This document shows positions 3,755 through 60,796 of a stretch of 64,000 nt of DNA, piece after piece. The notes under the pieces were generated by a model that did not search any database, was not told the DNA's origin, and was given only the letters and a program-made list of their open reading frames with translations. Location: the IMG/VR virus record IMGVR_UViG_3300020172_001601, positions 62,001 through 126,000 of that record; one strand, written 5' to 3'. Every line of letters starts with the position of its first letter. Positions within the stretch are counted from its first letter, which is position 1. A program made the translations under genes and the position numbers.

Positions 3755-4678
3755 ATGGCAGACCAACCTCCTGTTCCCCTCGCACTGTTTCCGGTGTATT
3801 TGTTCGATCATGAATTCGAGCCGCCGAAGACGGGAACGTATTATCTCGTCACCAAGACGGGCATCTATCTGCACAAAGAAACCAAGGCGGGCAATGCACT
3901 CGTCAAGGTCGAAGGTATTCCTTGGTTGCAAGAGCCGACCATTGAATTCCGTCTCAAGCTGCCGAAGATTCCGGGGAGCATCATCGGTCAGGCCCTTACC
4001 TTCTTTCGGAAGGTGTTTCAACAGTACAAGTCCGAAGCGTATGTGACGCTTTTGTACAGTGCCAAGTTGAATCAATATCGTCTCTGGTGTCCGGCACAGA
4101 AGGTGTCCGCTGCCAGCGTCAACTACGACCGCACCGACCAGCCTTCGTTCGAGGATCGTCAGTCCAACGATTGGCAGATGTGTGGCACGATTCACTCGCA
4201 CTGTGACTTCAGCGCCTATCACTCCGGCACGGATATTGGCGACGAAGCCAGCTTCGACGGTATCCACATTACCCTGGGCCACGTCAATCGGGCGCAGTTC
4301 AGTATGGAAGCCAGTGTCGCCATCAACGACAAGCGTGAGAAGTTGGAACCAGAAAACTGCTGCTCCGGCGTTATCCGGGTTTCCAACAAGGAAGTTGTTT
4401 CTCGCCCATACATGACCTGGGGTGAAAGTTGCTTCTTCGATCTCGAATTGTCGGAAGAAGACGCACAACAGCTTGTTGCTGATACGGCCATCATCAACGC
4501 CGAGTGGATGCCCAAGGTCGAACACAATGGCTGGCAGGGCAACCAGATGGGCTTCTACGGTGGTGGAGGCAACTGGAAGGGCAAGGGGTCAAAAAAAAAC
4601 GGAAACGATGATCTCTTCGACCAAGGCCCCGATGAAGGTACTGCCGACTGGTGGCGAAATCAGAATTTCATCGACTAA
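3755..4678 (+). CDS. JAB/MPN (Prok-JAB) metalloprotease, deubiquitinase-like
   Basis: SEA upstream Glu and GTIHSHCDFSAYHSGTDIGDE (HSH..S..D) JAMM motif. Confidence 0.9.
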   Translation: MADQPPVPLALFPVYLFDHEFEPPKTGTYYLVTKTGIYLHKETKAGNALVKVEGIPWLQEPTIEFRLKLPKIPGSIIGQALTFFRKVFQQYKSEAYVTLLYSAKLNQYRLWCPAQKVSAASVNYDRTDQPSFEDRQSNDWQMCGTIHSHCDFSAYHSGTDIGDEASFDGIHITLGHVNRAQFSMEASVAINDKREKLEPENCCSGVIRVSNKEVVSRPYMTWGESCFFDLELSEEDAQQLVADTAIINAEWMPKVEHNGWQGNQMGFYGGGGNWKGKGSKKNGNDDLFDQGPDEGTADWWRNQNFID

Positions 4679-4767
4679 TTGAACCTGATCGTCTTGAACC
4701 TGATCGCCCTTTGGCTCTCTAGGTGTTTAGCAAAAACTCAATCTCCAATAACGAAGGGAATAGCCTC

Positions 4768-5538
4768 ATGGCAACAAAGAAGGCGGCGAAGGACGAATCA
4801 CCCGTCGCCAAGAAGCCGCTCAAGATTAAGGTGATTGGAACGGGCGGCATCGGCCTTTGCCTGCTTCCTTCGCTCTGTCGATACCTCAACTATAACGGCG
4901 AGAAATATCCCGCCGTGGAAGTGAGCCTGATCGACGGCGATACGTTCGAGGAACGCAATCGTGAGCGACAGGACTTTGTTGAGACGGGGCCGAAGGCGTC
5001 CATGACCGCTGCCGAATATCGGGGCAAATTCCCACGACTGATGTTTTGGGACCATCCGGTATACGTCGCCGATCACAACGTCATTCAGTTGATTCGGGAG
5101 AACGATATTGTTCTTCTCTGTGTGGATAATCACAAGACCCGCAAGCTGATTAGCGACCGGGCCGAAGAACTGAAGAATGTTACCGTCATCAGTGGCGGCA
5201 ACGATTGGACTGATGGAAACGTGTTGCTTCATATTCGACGGGATGAGAAGAACCTGACGCCACCTTTGGCGAGCAAGTTTCACCCGGAGATTTTGAATCC
5301 GACCGACGAGAACCCTGCCGACGTGGAACAGAAGGCAGAAGGTTGTGCAGAGTTGGCTGTTGCTGCACCGCAACTGCTGATTACGAACAACTACATTGCC
5401 GCCAACATGCTGGCGGGACTGTACAACGTGATTGACGAAGGGCGATACGAGAAGGTTCTCGCCGCTCCGCACAATTTCGCAGAGGTCTACTGTGATCTCT
5501 CCGTGATGAAGTCCATCCCACGAGAACGCAAGGTGTAA
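4768..5538 (+). CDS. ThiF/E1-like ubiquitin-activating enzyme
   Basis: VIGTGGIG, IDGDTFEERNRERQ, CVDN, GGND, putative catalytic GCAE, PQLLITN. Confidence 0.9.
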   Translation: MATKKAAKDESPVAKKPLKIKVIGTGGIGLCLLPSLCRYLNYNGEKYPAVEVSLIDGDTFEERNRERQDFVETGPKASMTAAEYRGKFPRLMFWDHPVYVADHNVIQLIRENDIVLLCVDNHKTRKLISDRAEELKNVTVISGGNDWTDGNVLLHIRRDEKNLTPPLASKFHPEILNPTDENPADVEQKAEGCAELAVAAPQLLITNNYIAANMLAGLYNVIDEGRYEKVLAAPHNFAEVYCDLSVMKSIPRERKV

Positions 5539-12590: not shown

Positions 12591-12661
12591 AGGTGTGTGG
12601 TGTAGCGGTAGCACGCTGATCTCCAAAATCATCGGTGAGGGTTCGACTCCTTCCACACCTG
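12591..12661 (+). tRNA. tRNA-Trp(CCA)
   Basis: loop CTCCAAA, AGGTGTG/CACACCT. Confidence 0.85.
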
Positions 12662-12714
12662 CTGAGTTTATTGGTTCTCGACAACTCTTCGGAGTATAAA
12701 AACCAATACTGTAT

Positions 12715-13661: not shown

Positions 13662-13738
13662 GAGGTTGTGTTCGTCTAGTGGTCTAGGATGCCGTCGTTG
13701 AAGACGGCGACATGGGTTCAAATCCCATACACAATCTC
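13662..13738 (+). ncRNA. Glu-like tRNA body with 6-nt anticodon loop
   Basis: CCGTC-GTTGAA-GACGG; extended acceptor GAGGTTGTGT/ACACAATCTC. Confidence 0.65.
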
Positions 13739-13835: not shown

Positions 13836-13906
13836 GATTCGGGTTAGTGTAACGGTAGCACGGAGCCGTCAAAGGCTCCAGAGTGGTTCGACTCCACACC
13901 CTTATC
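13836..13906 (+). ncRNA. tRNA-like RNA, short anticodon loop (TAGTGTAACGGTAGCACG family)
   Basis: GGAGCC-GTCAAA-GGCTCC; T arm present. Confidence 0.6.
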
Positions 13907-13913
13907 ACAATAT

Positions 13914-14149: not shown

Positions 14150-14229
14150 TAGTTGTTGGATAAATTAGTGTAACGGTAGCACGCCTCTCACCAAGGGGAA
14201 GATTGGTTCGATTCCAATACCAACAACTA
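14150..14229 (+). ncRNA. tRNA-like RNA with 5-nt anticodon loop
   Basis: CCTCT-CACCA-AGGGG; terminal stem TAGTTGTTGG/CCAACAACTA. Confidence 0.7.
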
Positions 14230-14301
14230 AATGAGACAAATTAGTGTAACGGTAGCACGCTCCCGTGGAGGGAGAAGATTGGTTCAACTCCAATACTCAT
14301 T
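14230..14301 (+). ncRNA. tRNA-like RNA with 5-nt anticodon loop (paralog)
   Basis: CTCCC-GTGGA-GGGAG; same D and T arms as previous. Confidence 0.7.
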
Positions 14302-14304
14302 TAC

Positions 14305-14377
14305 GCCGCTTTGAGCAGAGTGGGATTGCGCCTGTCTTGTAAACAGGAATGAGTGAGTTCGATTCTCACAGGCGGCT
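14305..14377 (+). tRNA. tRNA-Thr(TGT)
   Basis: CCTGT-CTTGTAA-ACAGG. Confidence 0.8.
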
Positions 14378-14406
14378 CTGAAACATTTAACCTTTGGAGA
14401 AATACT

Positions 14407-15154
14407 ATGGTGCGTCTTTGGCTCGAAACTGTGCGGATTTAGACCAACAGGTAGGTTACACCTGGGGCATTACTTCTCGGTGATTCAACCGGGACAAGCT
14501 GGGTGTACCGTACTGGTGGCAAACTATCATGCACCGGAGGTAAAGAATCTGGAAGTATCCGTGAACGCCTTACGGCAATACGGTGTCCAGACCATAGTGA
14601 TTCAGAAGGACGTGTTTGACGCTGAGTTGTTCTTCCGACTATTGACGCTCGCTAAAATGGGCGACTTGAGCCGGATGACACAATTCAAGTCAACAGAAGA
14701 GGACGATAGGACTGGCCAATTGTTGACCTACCCTGTTCTCATGGCGCATGATGTTGCGGGTTACTCCGAAGTCATTGTGGGCCTGGATCAGAAGCAGCAT
14801 TTGGAATATGCCAGAAAGCTGTTGAGAAAATACAACAGTGTATATGGCACGACATATCCAATCCCGATAGCGAATATCGTGGTGGGACGTGTCAAAGATT
14901 TGCGTGACCCGACGAAGAAAATGTCGAAGTCATCACCACAAGGATGTTTATTCCTTGATGATAAGGTTGATGATATTCAACAAAAGATTCGGAAAGCGAC
15001 CGCAGATGAAGAGGGCCTGAATAACTTGAAGTTTTTGTATGGGGAGTTTGTAAGAGAAACGCCTCCAACAAGTAATCAAGAACTAAAAGAAAAGCTGGCC
15101 GATGGTTTGGTGAAATGCTTTGCAAGCTGTAGTGGCACAGCATCCGGCTCTTAA
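14407..15154 (+). CDS. trpS: tryptophanyl-tRNA synthetase (compact), requiring +1 frameshift at 14416-14421
   Basis: GFRPTGRLHLGHY, YPVLMAHD, VGLDQKQHLE, KMSKS; the SD-associated ATG (14407) is out of frame with the catalytic ORF. Confidence 0.85.
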
Positions 15155-15189
15155 CCGGAAGGTTCAGGGTTCAAGTCCCTGGCGAAGCA
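15117..15189 (+). tRNA. tRNA-Lys(CTT), overlaps trpS 3' end
   Basis: TCCGG-CTCTTAA-CCGGA. Confidence 0.8.
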
Positions 15190-15194
15190 CTCTT

Positions 15195-39528: not shown

Positions 39529-40437
39529 ATGAACATCACACGCATTGCTCCGTCGCCGACCGGCGATATGCACATTGGCACTGCCAGAACCGCATATTTC
39601 AACTGGCTCGCAGCACGGGCCAGCGGTGGTAAGTTCATTCTTCGGGTGGACGACACCGATCAGAAGCGAAACGATCCAGCCTATACAGAAGTCATTCTGT
39701 CCACAATGAAGTGGCTAGGTTTGGACTACGATGAGATCGTCTTCCAGAGTTCCAGATTCGACGTATACAAGGCCGCAGCGGGCTTGTTGATCCATGAAGG
39801 CTGGGCCGTTCCAAAAGATGGAGCCACGGTTTTTAACTTGAAGAAGGACCATGTTTTTCCTTCTCATTGGAAGGACGAAATCAAGGGCGACATCAAGATC
39901 AGCGATGATGACATATCCCATATGGATGGGATGGTTCTCATTAAGTCTGATGGGAGTCCATCTTATAACTTTTGTTCGATTGTTGATGATTTGCACATGG
40001 GGGTCAACCTAATCATCCGTGGAGTGGATCATATAACAAACACAGCAAAGCAGGTGATGCTTTGGGATGTCCTCAATAGCGGACAGACGATACCAAGGTT
40101 TGCCCACCTGGGTCTTATTTGCATTGATGGAAAGCCTATGTCCAAAAGAGACGGGGCATCGAGCATGTTGAATTACATGAACGCCGGATATGATTCCGAC
40201 GCCATGTTGAATTTTCTTGCACGCCTTGGTTGGGGGCCAACAAAGGACGACAAGTCCACAACCCTATTGCCGAGAGACAAGATGCTTGAAATGTTTCTAA
40301 CTTCGGGTAAGATGAGGAGTCAGCCAGCTAGTTTCGATTCTGGCAAATTGGAGTCGTTCGACCGCAAGTACAAGGCCCGTAAGGGGACTTGGCGAACGGG
40401 CGACAAGTTGATTTCTGACACTAACAAAGAGGCATAG
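39529..40437 (+). CDS. glutamyl-tRNA synthetase family protein lacking anticodon-binding domain
   Basis: RIAPSPTGDMHIG, LRVDDTD, IIRGVDH, KPMSKRDG; only 302 aa. Confidence 0.85.
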   Translation: MNITRIAPSPTGDMHIGTARTAYFNWLAARASGGKFILRVDDTDQKRNDPAYTEVILSTMKWLGLDYDEIVFQSSRFDVYKAAAGLLIHEGWAVPKDGATVFNLKKDHVFPSHWKDEIKGDIKISDDDISHMDGMVLIKSDGSPSYNFCSIVDDLHMGVNLIIRGVDHITNTAKQVMLWDVLNSGQTIPRFAHLGLICIDGKPMSKRDGASSMLNYMNAGYDSDAMLNFLARLGWGPTKDDKSTTLLPRDKMLEMFLTSGKMRSQPASFDSGKLESFDRKYKARKGTWRTGDKLISDTNKEA

Positions 40438-42034: not shown

Positions 42035-42370
42035 CATGCCAAGGGCGTCTTGGATTCATCGTGTTGATGCCCGCCGATTTCATTCGGCGGCAAGAATGAT
42101 GGAAGACGATTTGGAAGGTGCCTACTTGACCTGTAGGGAAAAGTACGGTGCAGAAGTGGCTGGAGTAGTGTTGGTCACAATACTCCGACAAAAATTGAAC
42201 AACAATCAAGACCAATGGCCTCCACCGGAAGACCTTATTCGCAAGGTGAACAACTTTCTCGTGGAACACGGCTTAATGATTGATTGAATTTGTTGACTGG
42301 ATGTGGGGTGCGAACCTCACCATGACATAGTGTGTCTGGTCAAATAACTCGAAAGGCAATGGTGATTACG

Positions 42371-44077
42371 ATGGCTAACAAGAATCTATTCAAGTCTGAG
42401 CGTGGCTCAATTGTTCCAGCAACGGACGTTCTCAACGAAGCTGGTGGTGTTGCATACAAGATGAGTGCAAAGCAGGCCCTTGCGCAGTACGTCTGCACTG
42501 GCTGCTTGAACGGCACCTACTACACGTCTGCCAAGACGCAACTGGACACTGTTCGTCAGTTGCTTACTGAAGTCGAGCCTGAGTTCCTTGGTCAGTTGGC
42601 TGTGTACTCGCACGAAAAGTCCTTCATGAAGGACTTGCCTGCTCTGTTGGTCGCATTCCTCGCATCCGACAAGGGTGCTGGTGGTGGTCCAACTACGGCT
42701 ACGCAGGAGCGAAAGCTGAAGACGCTCCGTAAGGTTTTCCATCGTGTCATCGACAGCGGCAACATGCTGCGCAACTTTGTGCAGATGATCCGTTCGGCAG
42801 CATTCGGTCGCAAGTCATTCGGTGAAGTGCCTCGCAAGCTGATTCGTGACTGGTTCGAGAATAAGTCTCCGGCTGGTATTTTCTTCCAGAGCATTGGCAA
42901 TAGCCCATCCCTGGCAGATATTATCAAGCTGACCAAGCCGAAGCCGAACACGCCTGAAAAGGCGGCTGTATTGGCGTATCTGCTTGGTGCAGAAACCGTT
43001 GACGGCGAAGATGGCAAGTTGCTTGTTCGCAAGTATCTTGACCGTGCCGACAAGCAGGTGAAGGTTGCGTACTCGCAGCCTTACGACAACCTGCCGGAAA
43101 TCATTCGTGAATACGAAGCGTGGAAGAAGGACAAGAGCCTCCCGGTTCCTGCCATCAACTTCCGCTTCCTGGACAACGAGAAGCTGTCAACTGCTCAGTG
43201 GGCAGATATTGCTTCCAAGGCAAACTGGCTTACGACCCTGAAGAACCTCAACGCATATGCCGACCACGGCGTATTCGGCGTTGAAGGCATGACTGACATG
43301 ATCGCCGCACGTCTCAGCAATGCTGATGAAGTGCGTAAGGTTCGGGTATTCCCATACCAGATCATGATGGCCTACCTCGCAACCGATACGGAAGCGAAAG
43401 TACCGCCCAAGGTCCGTAACGCCATTCAGGATGCTATGGAAGTGGCATGTGAAAACGTACCAGCGTTGGGAAAGGTTAAGTTCTTCCCGGACGTGTCTGG
43501 TTCGATGAGGAGCGCTGCTATTACGGGCGACCGTGGTTCGGCGACTTCTAAGGTTCGGTGTGTTGACGTGGCTGCTCTGTTCGCAGTGGCAATGCTTCGT
43601 CGCAACCCGGAAGCGGAAGTAATTCCGTTCGAGCAGACGGTTCGTGAACTTACACTGAACCCTCGTGACAGCATCATGACCAACGCTACTCGCCTCGCAG
43701 CGATTGGCGGTGGTGGAACCAACTGTTCGGCCCCACTTGCTTTGCTCAACGCAAAGAAGGATTGGTCGGCAGACGTGTTGGTGTATATTTCGGACTATGA
43801 GTCCTGGGTGGATAGCACTGGCTACCACGCTGGTAATGGCAACGGTACAGCACTGCTCAATGAGTGGGTGAAGTACAAGAGCCATAACAAGAATGCCAAG
43901 CTGATTTGCATCGACTTGACCCCTCGTGCAAACCATCAGGTCAAGGAACGTGATGATATTCTCCAGGTCGGTGGATTCTCGGACAACGTATTCAACGTGA
44001 TCGCAAGGTTCGTTGAAGGCGGCTGGTCGAAGGATTTTTGGGTCAAGGAGATTGAAAGCGTTCAACTGGATACTTAA
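42371..44077 (+). CDS. rsr: Ro60/TROVE domain RNA-binding protein with vWA domain
   Basis: NEAGGVAY, TGCLNGTYY, LKNL, VFPYQ, MIDAS DVSGSM, GGGTNCSAPL, ISDYESW. Confidence 0.9.
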   Translation: MANKNLFKSERGSIVPATDVLNEAGGVAYKMSAKQALAQYVCTGCLNGTYYTSAKTQLDTVRQLLTEVEPEFLGQLAVYSHEKSFMKDLPALLVAFLASDKGAGGGPTTATQERKLKTLRKVFHRVIDSGNMLRNFVQMIRSAAFGRKSFGEVPRKLIRDWFENKSPAGIFFQSIGNSPSLADIIKLTKPKPNTPEKAAVLAYLLGAETVDGEDGKLLVRKYLDRADKQVKVAYSQPYDNLPEIIREYEAWKKDKSLPVPAINFRFLDNEKLSTAQWADIASKANWLTTLKNLNAYADHGVFGVEGMTDMIAARLSNADEVRKVRVFPYQIMMAYLATDTEAKVPPKVRNAIQDAMEVACENVPALGKVKFFPDVSGSMRSAAITGDRGSATSKVRCVDVAALFAVAMLRRNPEAEVIPFEQTVRELTLNPRDSIMTNATRLAAIGGGGTNCSAPLALLNAKKDWSADVLVYISDYESWVDSTGYHAGNGNGTALLNEWVKYKSHNKNAKLICIDLTPRANHQVKERDDILQVGGFSDNVFNVIARFVEGGWSKDFWVKEIESVQLDT

Positions 44078-46671: not shown

Positions 46672-49233
46672 ATGGGTTCGTTCAAAGATACGCTGCAACT
46701 CCCGAAAACCGATATGCCCATCGCTGCCAACTTACCGGCCAGCGAACCCGCCGTTTACGCATCCTGGGGCAACGTCTATTCCCGCTTGAAGCGAGACGGG
46801 AAGAACCCTTTCATTCTTCATGATGGCCCGCCGTATGCTAACGGCGATATTCATATCGGCCATGCTCTCAATAAAATCCTCAAAGACTTCGTTGTGAAGT
46901 TCCAATACTTCAACGGGCGAGCCGTCGAGTTTGTCCCCGGCTGGGACTGTCACGGACTTCCGATTGAATCGAAGGTTTATTCCATCATCCGAGTTGGCGG
47001 CGGCAATCCCAGCAAAGAGCCGTTGGAATTAGTCCAACGCATGTGTCGGAAATATGCCGGTGAGCAAATTGCTAAACAAAAAGAGCAATTTCAAACCCTG
47101 GGCGTAATCGCCGATTGGGAAAACCACTACGAGACGATGAGTCCGTGGTTTGAAAACATGATCTCTCAGCGACTTGCTGAATTGCGGGATCATGGATATT
47201 TGGTTCGCCGCAAGAAGCCTGTCTATTGGTCTTGGTCTTATGGCACTGCACTGGCTGAGGCAGAAGTCGAATATCGTGACCGAGTAGATAATTCGGTGTA
47301 TGTCGTATTCAAAACTGATAAGTTCCCTTGGGGGCTTTTGGTTTGGACCACAACGCCGTGGACACTTCCGGCCAACGTCGCCGTGGCATTGAACCCCAAG
47401 ATGAAATATCTTGCTGTTCGTGTGCGAGATTACAATCTCCCCGTGCTAGTAGCTGCCGATCTTGTCAAGACCTTGACAGATAAAGGAATCATTGAGCATG
47501 TCTTTGACCTTTATAGTGCGCAAGGCGACGAGTTCAATGGTTGGCAATTTCAACATCCTGTTTATCCCGACCAAACCGTGCCGTGCGTAATGGCCGACTT
47601 TGTGTCCGCTGATAGCGGCACTGGTTGTGTACATATCGCCCCTGGTCATGGAGAAGAAGACTATCGAGTAGGGTTGGCGAATAATCTTCCGGTCGTCATG
47701 CCTGTTGACGGAACGGGCAGATACACCGAGGGCAAATACGAAGGTCAATGGATTTTTGATGAAACTGACGGTTCGTATAAAGAATACAACTCGAATCCCA
47801 ATATCCTTGCTGATTTAAGGGAGCGTGGTCTATTGGTTCATACTGAGAAGATCACTCACAGCTATCCCTATTGCAGCCGATCTGGAACGCCGGTCATCTT
47901 CCGTGCTACTGAACAGTGGTTCTTGGACTTGGACAAGATTCGCAATCTGATCTTGGGGCCGATGACTGCTATTGAGAATGTGCAGTTCTATCCAGAGCAT
48001 TCCAAGAACCGTATGGTTCCGATGCTGGAGAACCGCCCTGACTGGTGCATCAGTCGCCAGCGAGTATGGGGCGTGCCGATCTTTGAAGGACCGGACATTC
48101 TTGACGTATGGTTTGATTCAGGATTGACGTGGAACATCCTGGGAGATCGTCAGGCTGACGTTTATCTGGAAGGCAACGATCAGCACCGTGGATGGTTCCA
48201 GAGCAGCCTATGGCTGTCTGTGGCCCTTCAGGGCGTTGCGCCATACAAGAAGGTCATCACGCATGGCTTTGTTGTCGATCAAGACGGCAAAAAGATGGCT
48301 AAGTCCAAGGGCAATGTCGTGTCGCCATTGGAAGTGACTCAAAAGCAGGGAGCAGAAGTGCTTCGCTATTGGGTTGCGAGCATTGACTATACGAAGGATG
48401 CGCAGTGCAGCCCGGAGATCATGAAGCGTGCTGCCGAGGGCCACAAGAAACTTCGTAATACTTTCAGATTCCTAGTGGCAAATATGCCCAAGGAATCTCC
48501 GTATAAGAACGACCAGAATATGGTTTTCCTGCCGGTCAATCGTTGGATTTACGAAAAGACTCAGAAGGTCTTTTCTGAAGTCCATCAGTTGTTTGCCGAC
48601 AACCTGTTCCATGCTGGTCTGCAAAAGTTGACGGAGTATATCAATACTGATTTGAGCGGTATTTACATGAACGCCGTCAAAGACTGCTTGTATTGTGATG
48701 CTGTCGATAGTGTGTCCCGAAAGAATGTTGTTCACGTCATGAGTAAAATCCTCAAGGCGATGATGACGCTTGTGGCTCCGTTGTTTACCTACACGGCGCA
48801 GGAAGTGTTCAATTATTGTCCTGAATGGGTGAAGGGTGACGCCAAGGATATTTTCGATCTTCAATACGAAGCATTGCCAGACTTGCCGCCACACTTGGCT
48901 CGGATGGACGAAGCGTATTGGAAAGAGGCGTTGTCCGCATTCCATACTGAGTTCGACAAGATCAAGACCGCAGGCAAGGCTCGTGATACTTTGGAAGTCG
49001 TTATTGAATCGACTTCTGGTGATACGTTCTTTGTCGGGGCTGAAGATTGGTTTGTCGTAAGTCATTGGGCATCACATCCTTCAACCTGTGAGGCCCTGGG
49101 GGAATTCTCGGTGGGCGACAAGGTTTATCGGATTGTCAAGAGTCAGAAGAATAAGTGCGAACGATGCTGGAAACGCAATGCAGAACAGGAGTTATGTCCT
49201 CGCTGTCTCGGTGTGGTGAATCCGCAGGTTTGA
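46672..49233 (+). CDS. ileS: isoleucyl-tRNA synthetase
   Basis: HDGPPYANGDIHIGH, WTTTPWTLP, DWCISRQR, KMAKS, C-terminal CERC Zn finger. Confidence 0.97.
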   Translation: MGSFKDTLQLPKTDMPIAANLPASEPAVYASWGNVYSRLKRDGKNPFILHDGPPYANGDIHIGHALNKILKDFVVKFQYFNGRAVEFVPGWDCHGLPIESKVYSIIRVGGGNPSKEPLELVQRMCRKYAGEQIAKQKEQFQTLGVIADWENHYETMSPWFENMISQRLAELRDHGYLVRRKKPVYWSWSYGTALAEAEVEYRDRVDNSVYVVFKTDKFPWGLLVWTTTPWTLPANVAVALNPKMKYLAVRVRDYNLPVLVAADLVKTLTDKGIIEHVFDLYSAQGDEFNGWQFQHPVYPDQTVPCVMADFVSADSGTGCVHIAPGHGEEDYRVGLANNLPVVMPVDGTGRYTEGKYEGQWIFDETDGSYKEYNSNPNILADLRERGLLVHTEKITHSYPYCSRSGTPVIFRATEQWFLDLDKIRNLILGPMTAIENVQFYPEHSKNRMVPMLENRPDWCISRQRVWGVPIFEGPDILDVWFDSGLTWNILGDRQADVYLEGNDQHRGWFQSSLWLSVALQGVAPYKKVITHGFVVDQDGKKMAKSKGNVVSPLEVTQKQGAEVLRYWVASIDYTKDAQCSPEIMKRAAEGHKKLRNTFRFLVANMPKESPYKNDQNMVFLPVNRWIYEKTQKVFSEVHQLFADNLFHAGLQKLTEYINTDLSGIYMNAVKDCLYCDAVDSVSRKNVVHVMSKILKAMMTLVAPLFTYTAQEVFNYCPEWVKGDAKDIFDLQYEALPDLPPHLARMDEAYWKEALSAFHTEFDKIKTAGKARDTLEVVIESTSGDTFFVGAEDWFVVSHWASHPSTCEALGEFSVGDKVYRIVKSQKNKCERCWKRNAEQELCPRCLGVVNPQV

Positions 49234-59146: not shown

Positions 59147-60796
59147 ATGAACGAATTCCATATTTCGGAAAAAGACAACAACACCACGTTCGTCACAACG
59201 GCGATTGATTATCCGAACGCTCTGCCACATATCGGCACAGCATTCGAGAAGATCGGCGCTGACGTATACGCCCGGTTCCGTCGTTTCCAGGGTCGTGATG
59301 TATATTTCACGATGGGCAACGACGAGAACACTGTGAAGGTTCTCAAAGCAGCAAAAGCCGTAGACAAGCATCCTCAGCCATATGTCGATGAAATGGCCGA
59401 TGCGTTTAAGGCTGTGTGGAAAGAACTCAACATTTCCTTTGACGACTTCATTCAGACCAGTGAAGATCGACACCTGTTGGGTGTTCAGAGATTCCTGCGT
59501 GCTGTGAATTCCGCTGGTTATATTGAGAAGCGACCATACAAGGCTTTGTATTGTGAGGGCTGTGAAGAGTTCAAGAGTCCAAATAGCTTGGACTATGCAA
59601 AGCGATGCCCGAACCATACTGGCACACCTTTGGTGGAACGGGAGGAAGAGAATTACTTCTTTCTTCTGTCTGCATTCAAGCAGCGTGTGGCTGATTTGAT
59701 TTATCCCACTCCATTCCTCACTGCCTTCCTGAGTATTGAGCCTGAGTCTCGCTACAACGAAGTCACTAAGTTCATCGACACGGAACTGACGGATATTTCC
59801 ATCAGTCGCCGTAATGAAGGCTGGGGCATTCCAATTCCGTGGGACGACACCCAAGCCACCTATGTCTGGTTCGACGCTTTGTTGAACTATTTGACTGTGA
59901 TTGGTTTTGGGAACGATTGGGAGAAATTCCAAAAGTATTGGCCTGCTGAAGTTCACTTCATTGGCAAGGACATTACTCGGTTCCACTGTGCATTGTTCCC
60001 GGCAATGTGCATGGCCTATAACGAAGGATGTGATAAGCTGGGTGAGCCTCAATACAAGTTGAAGGCTTTTCCTCAGCGTGTATTTGCACACGGCTTCGTC
60101 AATCAAAAGAAGGGAAGTCAGGTTGTCAAGATTTCCAAGAGCGGAGATTCAATCCGACCTGGAGAACTGATTGAGCAGTTCGGGTCGGATGCGTACAGAT
60201 ACTATTTCTTGTCGAAGTTCAACTACGATACGGACGGTGAATATAGCCTGGACCACTTTAGAGAAGTGTATAACGCCGACCTCGCCAACTCCTTGGGCAA
60301 CCTTGTGAGTCGCACCGTAGGAATGTCGTTGCAGTATTTCGACGGGAAGATTCCACCGATGGTCGCAGAAGGCCAGCCTTGGCTTGATGAGAAGACGGCG
60401 TTGGAATACGAGCAATTTATTGTTGATTGTTGTTCGTATCGGCACGCTATTGAATGGACGTGGAAGATCATCTTCAACGCCAACAAGTTGATCGAGAATT
60501 CAAAGCCGTGGGAATTGGTTAAGTTGCCCGGCAACACCTGTGGTCAGGTGTTGGGCCAACTTGTGGGCAGTCTGAGAATCATCAGTCTGTTGATCCGACC
60601 GTTCACGCCAGCGGTGGCCGAGAAGATTTACACGACGTTTCAGTGGGCTGAAGGATGGAATGAAGTTGATTGGGAGTTCGTTAAGAAGTTGGCGACGAAC
60701 AACTTCCTGGGACTCGAAAACGGTATTGCCATCAACAGGAATGTTTTAGATAATGCTGGAAAGTTTCCGGTGCTTTTTCCGAGAGTCAAATCATGA
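59147..60796 (+). CDS. metG: methionyl-tRNA synthetase
   Basis: TTAIDYPNALPHIG, ISISR..WGIP, YVWFDAL, IGKDI, KISKS, LANSLGNL. Confidence 0.96.
   Translation: MNEFHISEKDNNTTFVTTAIDYPNALPHIGTAFEKIGADVYARFRRFQGRDVYFTMGNDENTVKVLKAAKAVDKHPQPYVDEMADAFKAVWKELNISFDDFIQTSEDRHLLGVQRFLRAVNSAGYIEKRPYKALYCEGCEEFKSPNSLDYAKRCPNHTGTPLVEREEENYFFLLSAFKQRVADLIYPTPFLTAFLSIEPESRYNEVTKFIDTELTDISISRRNEGWGIPIPWDDTQATYVWFDALLNYLTVIGFGNDWEKFQKYWPAEVHFIGKDITRFHCALFPAMCMAYNEGCDKLGEPQYKLKAFPQRVFAHGFVNQKKGSQVVKISKSGDSIRPGELIEQFGSDAYRYYFLSKFNYDTDGEYSLDHFREVYNADLANSLGNLVSRTVGMSLQYFDGKIPPMVAEGQPWLDEKTALEYEQFIVDCCSYRHAIEWTWKIIFNANKLIENSKPWELVKLPGNTCGQVLGQLVGSLRIISLLIRPFTPAVAEKIYTTFQWAEGWNEVDWEFVKKLATNNFLGLENGIAINRNVLDNAGKFPVLFPRVKS

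What the first reader, a model, noticed from the sequence alone, without database searches (positions are those of the whole stretch)
14394..14482. TrpRS appears to need a prfB-like +1 frameshift at a hungry Trp codon (CUU-UGG): a Trp-tRNA-sensing switch
Seen: SD TTGGAGA (14394) precedes ATG 14407, which reads ATG GTG CGT CTT TGG CTC...TAG (MVRLWLETVRI*, stop 14440). The TrpRS HIGH-type motif (GFRPTGRLHLGHY) lies in the +1 frame, which has no ATG/GTG/TTG start upstream of it. Slipping from CTT to TTT at 14416-14419 gives MVRLGSKLCGFRPTGRLHLGHY, a well-formed TrpRS N-terminus (~248 aa). Known: prfB shifts +1 at CUU-UGA with an internal SD 3 nt upstream; here ATGGTG sits exactly 3 nt before CTT, and UGG replaces UGA. 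Inference: when Trp-tRNA is scarce or cleaved, the ribosome pauses at UGG, shifts and makes TrpRS. This would be autoregulation of an aminoacyl-tRNA synthetase by recoding at its cognate codon, which I do not know to have been described.
Basis: partly seen in the sequence, partly recalled or inferred. Interest (0 to 1): 0.93.

Follow-up and report, generated by a model that had tools for sequence, protein, structure and literature searches.

The report
Frameshift switch in phage TrpRS gene
A giant phage's tryptophanyl-tRNA synthetase gene can be read only if the ribosome slips forward one base at CUU-UGG, and because the slip competes with decoding a tryptophan codon, the enzyme is probably made when charged tRNA-Trp runs short.

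Summary
The SD GGAG and ATG 14407 open an 11-codon frame (MVRLWLETVRI, stop TAG 14440). The 244-codon TrpRS frame (14420-15154) lies +1 and has no ATG, GTG or TTG before its HIGH motif.

I collected 29 distinct relatives from independent metagenomes. All carry the same cassette: SD, ATG in the leader frame, GGTG or GGAGG, a 3-nt spacer, then CTT-TGG-C. CTTTGG is invariant in 29/29, while the third positions of neighbouring invariant codons vary freely. Seventeen loci have no in-frame start at all. Nine have only a TTG that is merely a Leu codon.

The cassette marks one well-supported clade (100/99) with a single nested loss. More distant relatives start with an ordinary in-frame ATG. Coding signatures in the +1 frame begin directly after CTTT.

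The geometry matches prfB (SD-like, 3 nt, CUU_U, then C), and the heptamer matches Ty1 (CUU_AGG_C). All 26 full-length cassette-clade proteins contain no tryptophan.

Frameshifting itself is strongly supported. Sensing of Trp-tRNA is inferred and untested. I found no published description.

The parts
14396..14399 (+). Shine-Dalgarno GGAG for initiation of the leader (0) frame, 7 nt before the ATG
   Evidence: An SD-like purine motif lies 4-11 nt before the 0-frame ATG in 28/28 relatives that have upstream sequence.
14407..14442 (+). Leader (0-frame) ORF: ATG GTG CGT CTT TGG CTC GAA ACT GTG CGG ATT TAG (MVRLWLETVRI*)
   Evidence: In relatives the leader frame always stops 2-13 codons after CTT.
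14409..14412 (+). Internal SD-like GGTG, complementary to CACC of the 16S rRNA anti-SD; it ends 3 nt before the slippery codon
   Evidence: Positions -7 and -4 are G in 29/29. The element is GGTG in 25 loci and (G)GAGG in 4, always ending at -4. This is the same spacing as in prfB (PMC12421855).
14413..14415 (+). Spacer, the E-site codon CGT
   Evidence: The codon varies (CGT, TGT, TAT, TTT, TTA, ATA, GTG), and T is at the third position in 25/29.
14416..14419 (+). Slippery sequence CTT_T, where the P-site tRNA-Leu re-pairs from CUU to UUU
   Evidence: Invariant in 29/29. It is the only conserved slippery motif inside the window bounded by the +1-frame stops upstream and the 0-frame stops downstream.
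14419..14421 (+). TGG, the 0-frame A-site Trp codon and proposed sensor of Trp-tRNATrp supply
   Evidence: Invariant in 29/29.
14420..15154 (+). TrpRS-like coding frame (+1): 244 codons plus the stop TAA at 15152-15154. The first codon, GGC, is read after the slip.
   Evidence: Pfam PF00579, E 5e-30. TIGR00233 scores 108 bits, below its cutoff of 176.75. The AF2 model has pLDDT 93, and its top 50 PDB fold matches are all bacterial TrpRS. Third-position variability in the +1 frame starts directly after CTTT.
14429..14431 (+). CTG Leu codon, the rival start site, rejected
   Evidence: The homologous codon is CTG, CTT, CTC, CTA, TTA, TTG or ATT across the 29 loci.
14459..14470 (+). HIGH signature (HLGH) of class I aaRS, upstream of the first in-frame canonical start (GTG 14480)
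   Evidence: G16 and H17 are invariant in alignment A1.
14918..14932 (+). KMSKS signature
14305..14378 (+). tRNA-Thr(TGT) immediately upstream; the gene sits inside a same-strand tRNA array
15117..15190 (+). tRNA-Lys(CTT), which overlaps the last 38 nt of the TrpRS ORF
12591..12662 (+). Phage-encoded tRNA-Trp(CCA), the presumed substrate
   Evidence: A tRNA-Trp lies within 1.5 kb of the gene in 7 of 22 related loci.

Best explanation
The gene needs a programmed +1 ribosomal frameshift. Ribosomes start at ATG 14407 behind a good SD and read Met-Val-Arg-Leu. They then hold peptidyl-tRNA-Leu on CUU in the P site, with UGG in the A site.

At that point two events compete.
- If Trp-tRNATrp arrives, the ribosome stays in frame and terminates after 11 codons, and no enzyme is made.
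- If the A site stays empty, tRNA-Leu re-pairs from CUU to UUU. The slip is helped by pairing of the anti-SD with GGUG 3 nt upstream. GGC (Gly) is decoded next, and the 248-aa TrpRS (MVRL-GSKLCGFRPTG...) is made.

Output therefore rises when charged tRNA-Trp falls. This would be a negative feedback loop on the enzyme that charges it. The ORF contains no Trp codon, so once the ribosome has shifted, translation does not depend on Trp-tRNA.

Shown by comparative sequence evidence: the split frames, the invariant cassette, the absence of an in-frame start, and +1-frame coding directly after CTTT. Inferred: the slippage event itself, its stimulation by the SD-like element, its dependence on Trp-tRNA, and the TrpRS activity of the protein.
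For: - Twenty-nine distinct loci carry the cassette. In all of them CTT is in the frame of an upstream ATG that has an SD, and TrpRS is in the +1 frame.
- CTTTGG is invariant in 29/29. C follows it in 28/29, and G is at -7 and -4 in 29/29. By contrast, the third positions of the invariant Gly, Arg, Pro, Thr and Gly codons 15-30 nt downstream are fully degenerate.
- The TrpRS frame has no ATG, GTG or TTG in 17 loci and only the TTG Leu codon in 9. Thirteen loci have a stop in that frame within 15 nt upstream of CTT.
- The 36 non-cassette loci other than the deletion variant L063 all have an in-frame ATG 15-48 nt upstream of GFRPTG (for 31 of them, for L158; the other four are the distant genome-bin relatives L153 and L155-L157, labelled in-frame).
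- After CTTT, variability falls on the third positions of the +1 frame (TCG/TCT/TCA, AAA/AAG), and the spacer changes length only by whole codons (GSKL, GSKRL, GKL, GNQL, GSL and others).
- The cassette forms one clade with 100/99 support, containing 26 cassette loci and one nested in-frame locus.
- Of 120 database gene calls, 74 start after the GFRPTG motif.
- The geometry equals that of prfB (PMC12421855). The heptamer CUU_UGG_C parallels Ty1 CUU_AGG_C, with the same +1 codon GGC (PMC5009743).
- All 26 clade proteins contain zero Trp in 5,951 aa, against 1.9% in 17 other ORFs of the window. Among 120 homologues there are 2 Trp in 26,946 aa, both in proteins with ordinary starts.
- TrpRS identity is supported.
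Against: - There is no experimental evidence of any kind. The host, the efficiency and the response to Trp-tRNA are all unknown.
- GGUG offers only 4 bp of pairing, so it is a weak SD-like element.
- No stimulatory RNA structure was found (z = 0.68).
- UGG is forced in part by the slippery T plus a +1-frame Gly codon, and the cassette has a single evolutionary origin. Its invariance is therefore not 29 independent observations.
- The absence of Trp is shared by several in-frame phage relatives, so it partly predates the cassette.
- Two loci (L007, L160) also have an in-frame ATG, and L159 has an in-frame GTG.
- The protein is about 80 aa shorter than bacterial TrpRS and scores below the TIGR00233 cutoff, so aminoacylation of tRNA-Trp is not proven.
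Confidence: 0.78

Rival explanations
1. A real +1 frameshift that is not regulatory. The site acts as a fixed attenuator that sets a low, constant yield of TrpRS from a heavily transcribed tRNA array. UGG is present only because the slippery T must be followed by the Gly codon GGC.
For: The same comparative evidence for frameshifting applies. UGG equals T plus GG of the +1 codon. The cassette has a single origin. Fixed-ratio frameshifts are common in phages (PMC5009743).
Against: A weak SD would achieve a low yield more simply. The A-site codon is the cognate codon of the encoded enzyme, a chance of about 1 in 13 among U-starting sense codons. The third base of the Gly codon is C in 28/29 loci, although other Gly codons nearby are degenerate. 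The ORF is completely free of Trp codons. Known +1 sites depend on a slow A-site codon (PMC5009743).
Confidence: 0.17
2. The leader is an independent upstream ORF. TrpRS is initiated separately at the Leu codon CTG 14429, or at another non-AUG codon, by coupling or re-initiation.
For: In 16 loci the leader stops (WL*) just before the Leu-Cys codons. TTG or CTG occupies this position in some loci, and gene callers often start there.
Against: The codon is CTT, CTC, CTA, TTA or ATT in many loci, and none of these is a usable start. The G-S-K codons upstream of it show synonymous changes in the +1 frame and whole-codon indels, so they are translated in the +1 frame. No SD precedes it.
Confidence: 0.03
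3. No frameshift occurs. Translation starts in the TrpRS frame further upstream at a non-canonical codon, and W-C-V-F-G is a conserved N-terminal peptide.
For: Thirteen database gene calls read through the cassette from fortuitous upstream starts. L007 and L160 have in-frame ATGs.
Against: Thirteen loci have a stop in the TrpRS frame within 15 nt upstream of CTT, and 17 have no canonical start there at all. In every locus the ATG that has an SD is in the other frame. Phe at this position is always TTT and Leu is always CTT, which points to selection on the nucleotides rather than on the amino acids.
Confidence: 0.015
4. A sequencing or assembly indel, a decaying pseudogene, or transcriptional slippage on the T run.
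For: A single base in a TTT run separates the two frames.
Against: Twenty-nine distinct sequences from many independent assemblies keep the same offset across a clade with terminal branches of 0.1-0.5 changes per site. The protein is under strong purifying selection. Three T residues are far too few for RNA polymerase slippage (established knowledge).
Confidence: 0.005

Closest known systems
prfB (release factor 2) autoregulatory +1 frameshift, AGGGGG-UAU-CUU_UGA_C
   Same: CUU_U slippery sequence; an SD-like element ending 3 nt upstream; C after the A-site codon; the site lies near the 5' end of the gene; the 0-frame product is a short throw-away peptide; the A-site codon is the one whose decoding depends on the gene's own product (PMC12421855).
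   Different: The A-site codon is a sense codon (UGG) rather than UGA, so the competitor would be an aminoacyl-tRNA, not a release factor. The SD-like element is usually the weaker GGUG. The gene is an aaRS in a phage. The site lies 3-11 codons from the start, against 25 in E. coli prfB.
Yeast Ty1 / ABP140 +1 frameshift, CUU_AGG_C ('hungry' sense codon)
   Same: [quoted passage not shown] The window itself encodes two tRNA-Gly(GCC) genes.
   Different: Ty1 is eukaryotic, has no SD stimulator and has no feedback, because its product does not supply the limiting tRNA. In the phage case the product would replenish the limiting aminoacyl-tRNA.
Antizyme +1 frameshift (polyamine sensor)
   Same: Recoding serves as both sensor and effector of a negative feedback loop.
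   Different: The signal (polyamines), the shift site (UCC_UGA) and the stimulators all differ, and antizyme is eukaryotic.
T-box riboswitch on trpS in Firmicutes, and Trp-codon leader peptides (trpL attenuation)
   Same: The same regulatory logic: more Trp-pathway enzyme or TrpRS when charged tRNA-Trp is low. A Trp codon in a short leader ORF acts as the sensor.
   Different: No T-box or any other Rfam element is present. There is no terminator/antiterminator pair or significant structure. There is one Trp codon, not two in tandem. The output is a change of reading frame, not a change in transcription.
Engineered RF2-site reporters in which UGA is replaced by sense codons, UGG included (Curran & Yarus 1989; Sipley & Goldman 1993, PMC46077)
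   Same: From my own knowledge; the papers could not be opened here. At CUU-NNN with the RF2 SD, frameshifting competes with aminoacyl-tRNA selection. The phage cassette looks like a natural version of that design.
   Different: Those were laboratory constructs used as kinetic probes. No natural gene was known to use the arrangement.

Membership tests
prfB-type programmed +1 frameshift site | Slippery CUU_U | tested here: met
   CTTT at 14416-14419; invariant in 29/29 loci.
prfB-type programmed +1 frameshift site | Internal SD-like sequence 3 nt upstream of CUU | tested here: met
   GGTG (25 loci) or GGAGG/GAGG (4 loci), always ending at -4. The geometry follows PMC12421855. GGTG is weaker than AGGGGG.
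prfB-type programmed +1 frameshift site | In-frame stop codon (UGA) in the A site, recognised by the gene's own product | tested here: not met
   The A-site codon is UGG (Trp) in 29/29 loci. The site therefore works like prfB but is not a prfB site.
prfB-type programmed +1 frameshift site | C immediately after the A-site codon | tested here: met
   C in 28/29 loci and T in one.
prfB-type programmed +1 frameshift site | Frameshift efficiency responds to the level of the product | not testable with these tools
   Needs reporter assays.
Ty1-type hungry-codon +1 frameshift | Heptamer CUU_NGG_C with a slowly decoded sense A-site codon and the +1 codon GGC | tested here: inconclusive
   The heptamer CUU_UGG_C is present, with the +1 codon GGC (PMC5009743). 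Whether UGG is slowly decoded in the unknown host cannot be tested.
Tryptophanyl-tRNA synthetase (class Ic aaRS) | HIGH and KMSKS signatures | tested here: met
   HLGH at 14459-14470 and KMSKS at 14918-14932; invariant in A1.
Tryptophanyl-tRNA synthetase (class Ic aaRS) | Trp-pocket motifs (LLTYPxLMAxD with the specificity Asp; GxDQKQH) | tested here: met
   LLTYPVLMAHDV and VGLDQKQHLE align to B. stearothermophilus TrpRS. D111, D123, Q124 and H127 are invariant.
Tryptophanyl-tRNA synthetase (class Ic aaRS) | TrpRS fold | tested here: met
   The AF2 model has pLDDT 93. The top 50 PDB matches are all TrpRS, with TM (query) 0.77-0.84.
Tryptophanyl-tRNA synthetase (class Ic aaRS) | Full-length equivalog (score above the curated cutoff; complete C-terminal anticodon-binding domain) | tested here: not met
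   TIGR00233 scores 108 bits against a cutoff of 176.75 and covers only profile positions 6-222 of 328. The protein has 244-248 aa against about 330, and TM (target) is about 0.6. It is a compact TrpRS-like enzyme whose charging of tRNA-Trp is unproven.
Leader-peptide attenuation / T-box control of Trp genes | A T-box or a terminator/antiterminator RNA structure, or tandem Trp codons | tested here: not met
   Rfam finds only tRNAs. The fold z-score is 0.68. There is a single Trp codon.

The most novel reading that the evidence does not exclude
Huge phages carry a natural sensor of charged tRNA that is built from recoding. A single cognate UGG codon in the A site of a prfB/Ty1-like CUU_U slip site gates synthesis of a compact, Trp-free TrpRS. 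The phage would then switch on its own charging enzyme only when Trp-tRNATrp falls. Such a fall could come from host shut-off, from the flood of phage-encoded tRNA-Trp, or from host defences that disable TrpRS or tRNA-Trp. This would be the first autoregulation of an aminoacyl-tRNA synthetase by frameshifting at its own codon, and the first conserved bacterial-type +1 programmed frameshift driven by a hungry sense codon.
Probability: 0.6. Interest if true: 0.93.

Novelty: new variant of a known kind. Interest (0 to 1): 0.88.

Why it matters
Known ways of controlling aaRS genes are T-boxes, leader-peptide attenuation, mimicry of tRNA by an mRNA operator, and transcription factors. Recoding is not among them. 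prfB is the paradigm of bacterial +1 programmed frameshifting, and it uses a stop codon. Use of 'hungry' sense codons is known from yeast Ty elements and from starvation experiments, not from a conserved bacterial or phage gene.

This cassette joins the two ideas. It gives a compact, transplantable element of about 16 nt whose output should report the availability of charged tRNA-Trp. That would be useful as a biosensor and for studying decoding kinetics.

It also matters for annotation. About 88% of the 120 database gene calls for this family start at the wrong place (107 of 120, counting P0038), and 74 of them lack the GFRPTG motif, many also the HIGH active-site motif. Annotation pipelines should therefore model the frameshift.

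Finally, it bears on why huge phages carry their own translation genes and how they time them.

Tried and rejected
- DNA search of GenBank phages found only tRNA matches. The protein search found only relatives at 35% identity or less.
- An exact-pattern scan of IMG/VR for GTGNNTCTTTGGCTCNAA gave 76 hits. Only 3 were TrpRS, all already known, and the rest were chance or unrelated sequence. The scan did not widen the sample and showed no second gene family with the cassette.
- The genome-contig scan added one cassette locus (L152, a phage-like contig binned as Neisseriaceae) and distant cellular TrpRS with ordinary starts.
- No DNA was available for P0037.
- RNA folding of 14385-14480 gave no structure beyond shuffled controls.
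- Rfam found no T-box or leader element.
- Nine literature searches found no report of frameshifting in any aaRS gene. The 2016 recoding review is silent on it.
- The primary papers on RF2-site sense-codon reporters could not be opened.
- Considered and rejected: a start at CTG 14429, upstream non-canonical initiation, an assembly error, a pseudogene, transcriptional slippage, and an alternative genetic code. The window's own TrpRS frame is open for 62 nt upstream of CTT with no start, so stop-codon reassignment would not rescue it.

Full report
**What is in the window.** The region sits in a long same-strand tRNA array. ARAGORN finds 49 tRNA genes in the 64-kb window. tRNA-Thr ends at 14378 and tRNA-Lys begins at 15117. 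The window is part of a 340-kb IMG/VR contig and so comes from a huge phage. It also encodes a GluRS/GlnRS-like catalytic domain, a LeuRS-type enzyme and a MetRS, all with ordinary starts.

Between the two tRNAs the sequence reads GGAG (14396-14399), 7 nt, then ATG GTG CGT CTT TGG CTC GAA ACT GTG CGG ATT TAG (14407-14442). The +1 frame is open from 14357 to 15154. It encodes ...GSKLCGFRPTGRLHLGHY... and has no ATG, GTG or TTG before GTG 14480, which lies beyond the HIGH motif. GGTGNNNCTTTGGC occurs once in the window, against 0.04 expected by chance.

**What the protein is.**
- The 244-codon frame matches Pfam PF00579 (E 5e-30). Its best match in NCBIfam is the trpS equivalog TIGR00233, but at 108 bits it is below the 176.75 cutoff and covers only profile positions 6-222 of 328.
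- Against the PDB, the best sequence matches are bacterial TrpRS. The motifs LLTYPxLMAxD (which holds the Trp-specificity Asp), GxDQKQH and KMSKS are all conserved.
- An AlphaFold model built on 31 homologues has pLDDT 93. Its top 50 structural matches are all TrpRS, with TM 0.77-0.84 on the query length and about 0.6 on the target length.

The protein is therefore a compact TrpRS-type enzyme, about 80 residues shorter than cellular TrpRS, mostly in the C-terminal domain. That it charges tRNA-Trp is likely but not shown. The phage encodes tRNA-Trp(CCA) at 12591-12662.

**Comparative test.** The protein search returned a large family of 200-285-aa relatives, many on contigs of 0.2-0.7 Mb. Their N-termini already showed the problem. 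Of the 120 best hits:
- 74 gene calls start after the GFRPTG motif;
- 20 start exactly at the Leu/Cys codon;
- 13 read through a conserved 'WCVFG', which is the cassette translated in the TrpRS frame;
- 13 appear to have a short ordinary start such as MKRLCGL, although one of these, P0038, turned out to carry the cassette.

I fetched DNA for relatives from IMG/VR, JGI/ENA metagenomes, GTDB genome bins and Logan assemblies. I then located the GFRPTG codon in each and analysed the upstream sequence.

**Results of that analysis.** Twenty-nine distinct loci carry the cassette.
- In all 29, CTT is in frame with an upstream ATG 9-33 nt away, and TrpRS is in the +1 frame.
- An SD-like purine motif lies 4-11 nt before that ATG in 28 of the 28 loci that have upstream sequence.
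- Positions 0 to +5 (CTTTGG) are invariant, and +6 is C in 28/29.
- Positions -7 and -4 are G in 29/29. The element at -7..-4 is GGTG in 25 loci and (G)GAGG in 4. Both are substrings of the canonical GGAGGUG, and both end exactly 3 nt before CTT.
- By contrast, the third positions of the invariant Gly-Phe/Leu-Arg-Pro-Thr-Gly codons 15-30 nt downstream are fully degenerate (for example GGA 10, GGC 5, GGT 12, GGG 2). The invariance of the cassette is therefore selection on nucleotides, not lack of divergence.
- In the TrpRS frame, 17 loci have no canonical start between the upstream stop and GFRPTG. Nine have only a TTG at the Leu codon. One has a GTG inside a lineage-specific insertion, and two (L007, L160) have an ATG.
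- Thirteen loci have a stop in the TrpRS frame within 15 nt upstream of CTT, often the TGA created by ATG-A.
- The leader frame always terminates 2-13 codons after CTT, as Trp-Leu-stop in 16 loci.

**The +1 frame is coding directly after CTTT.** The next codons are Gly-Ser-Lys, with synonymous variation (TCG/TCT/TCA, AAA/AAG). In the leader frame those same changes would swap Glu, stop and Lys. The spacer up to Leu-Cys-Gly varies only by whole codons (GSKL, GSKRL, GSKNL, GKL, GNQL, GDKL, GSL, and a 9-codon insertion in L159).

The Leu codon homologous to CTG 14429 is CTG, CTT, CTC, CTA, TTA, TTG or ATT. It is a Leu codon and not a start.

**Phylogeny.** In an ML tree of 55 proteins, the cassette maps to one clade with 100/99 support, containing 26 cassette loci and one in-frame locus. 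The in-frame locus, L158 (MSTLCGF), is nested inside the clade and so is a secondary loss. The tree needs two changes, against about 18 for shuffled labels. More distant phage relatives (50% identity or less) and cellular TrpRS start with an ordinary in-frame ATG (for example MKTIVGIRPTG). Terminal branches in the cassette clade are 0.1-0.5 changes per site, so the cassette has been held for a long time.

**Mechanism.** The bounds set by the +1-frame stops upstream and the 0-frame stops downstream confine the frame change to GTG-NNN-CTT-TGG. CTT_T is the only conserved slippery motif there.

The architecture equals that of prfB: an SD-like element, a 3-nt spacer, CUU_U, the A-site codon, then C (PMC12421855). 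The difference is UGG in place of UGA. The heptamer CUU_UGG_C also parallels Ty1 CUU_AGG_C. There, slow decoding of AGG by a scarce tRNA, together with an abundant tRNA-Gly for the +1 codon GGC, drives 40% frameshifting (PMC5009743). The window encodes two tRNA-Gly(GCC) genes.

No RNA structure (z = 0.68) and no Rfam element is present.

I therefore infer that tRNA-Leu slips from CUU to UUU in competition with Trp-tRNATrp binding at UGG, and that the product is MVRL-GSKLCGFRPTG... (248 aa).

**Is it a Trp-tRNA sensor?** This part is inference. Three observations favour it.
- The A-site codon is the cognate codon of the encoded enzyme and is invariant.
- The base after it is fixed as C, although Gly third positions elsewhere are free.
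- All 26 full-length clade proteins contain no tryptophan in 5,951 residues. Seventeen other ORFs of the window average 1.9% Trp, and in-frame relatives average 0.44%. Among the 120 database homologues there are only 2 Trp in 26,946 residues, both in proteins with ordinary starts.

Once shifted, the ribosome therefore never needs Trp-tRNA again. That is what one would expect of an enzyme that must be made when Trp-tRNA is scarce.

There are caveats. The cassette has a single origin. UGG is partly forced by T plus GG. Some in-frame phage relatives are also Trp-free. A constitutive attenuator remains possible; I give it about 0.17.

**Possible origin (inference).** The leader ...CGT CTT TG(G) and the mature ...CTG TGC GGA look like two copies of an ancestral N-terminus M-x-R-L-C-G. 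Compare in-frame L042, ATG AGA CGT CTT TGT GGA. A partial duplication of 3n+1 nt inside that N-terminus would have created the slip site and the offset in one step.

**Novelty.** Nine full-text searches found no description of frameshifting in an aaRS gene or of a CUU_UGG site. The comprehensive 2016 recoding review does not mention one either. From my own knowledge, RF2-site reporters with UGA replaced by sense codons, UGG included, were used in the laboratory to measure aminoacyl-tRNA selection (Curran & Yarus 1989; Sipley & Goldman 1993). I could not open those papers.

The phage cassette looks like a natural version of that construct. I file it as a new variant of the prfB/Ty1 kind of +1 programmed frameshift. 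It is not a member of the prfB family, because the defining in-frame stop codon is absent.

**Verdict.** The requirement for a +1 frameshift is strongly supported (about 0.9). Trp-tRNA-responsive autoregulation is plausible and testable (about 0.6).

Noticed in passing
window 15117-15154: The TrpRS ORF ends (TAA 15152-15154) 38 nt inside the downstream tRNA-Lys(CTT) gene. L002 shares the window's tRNA-encoded C-terminal tail, and in L030 the ORF runs about 15 nt into tRNA-Lys. If RNase P cuts at the tRNA 5' end, the processed mRNA would lack a stop codon.
   Followed up: partly
window 14152-14303, 13664-13738 and 13836-13908: There are two tRNA-like repeats between tRNA-Glu and tRNA-Thr that ARAGORN does not call; Rfam gives only a weak tRNA match at 14165-14219 (23 bits). 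There are also two ARAGORN 'tRNA-???' calls with odd anticodon loops. These may be degenerate or unusual tRNAs.
   Followed up: partly
L063:1440-1515 (compare L022): A close relative of L022 from a neighbouring sample lacks 9 nt (GGTGCGTCT), so it has lost the leader ATG and the CTT codon. It may be a dead allele, a start at the TTG Leu codon, or an assembly variant.
   Followed up: no
window 39529-40437, 46672-49233 and 59147-60796: There are three further aaRS genes: a GluRS/GlnRS-type catalytic domain only (302 aa), a LeuRS-type enzyme (853 aa) and a MetRS (549 aa). All have ordinary ATG starts, and no cognate-codon slip site was seen at their 5' ends.
   Followed up: partly
window 42332-44077: An ORF with a Ro60 vWA domain and a TROVE domain (a Ro60-like RNA-quality-control protein) lies among the tRNA genes.
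   Followed up: no
window 3755-5538: Adjacent ORFs have JAB-like (weak, just below the Pfam cutoff) and ThiF/E1-like domains. This may be a ubiquitin-like conjugation or deconjugation pair.
   Followed up: no
L159:1-130: A group II intron reverse transcriptase (RVT_N, RVT_1, GIIM, HNH) lies about 450 nt upstream of the tRNA array, and about 1.4 kb upstream of the TrpRS gene that the array holds, in this relative.
   Followed up: no
L159:1445-1530: This relative has a 9-codon insertion (GHSVGKPHGSE, partly repeating G-S-E) between the slip site and Leu-Cys-Gly. The insertion is in frame, so the +1 offset is kept. Its SD-like element is GGAGG.
   Followed up: yes
L152 (RXKI01000004.1): A 70-kb contig binned as a Neisseriaceae MAG carries the cassette gene within a dense tRNA array. 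It is probably a phage contig that was mis-binned.
   Followed up: no
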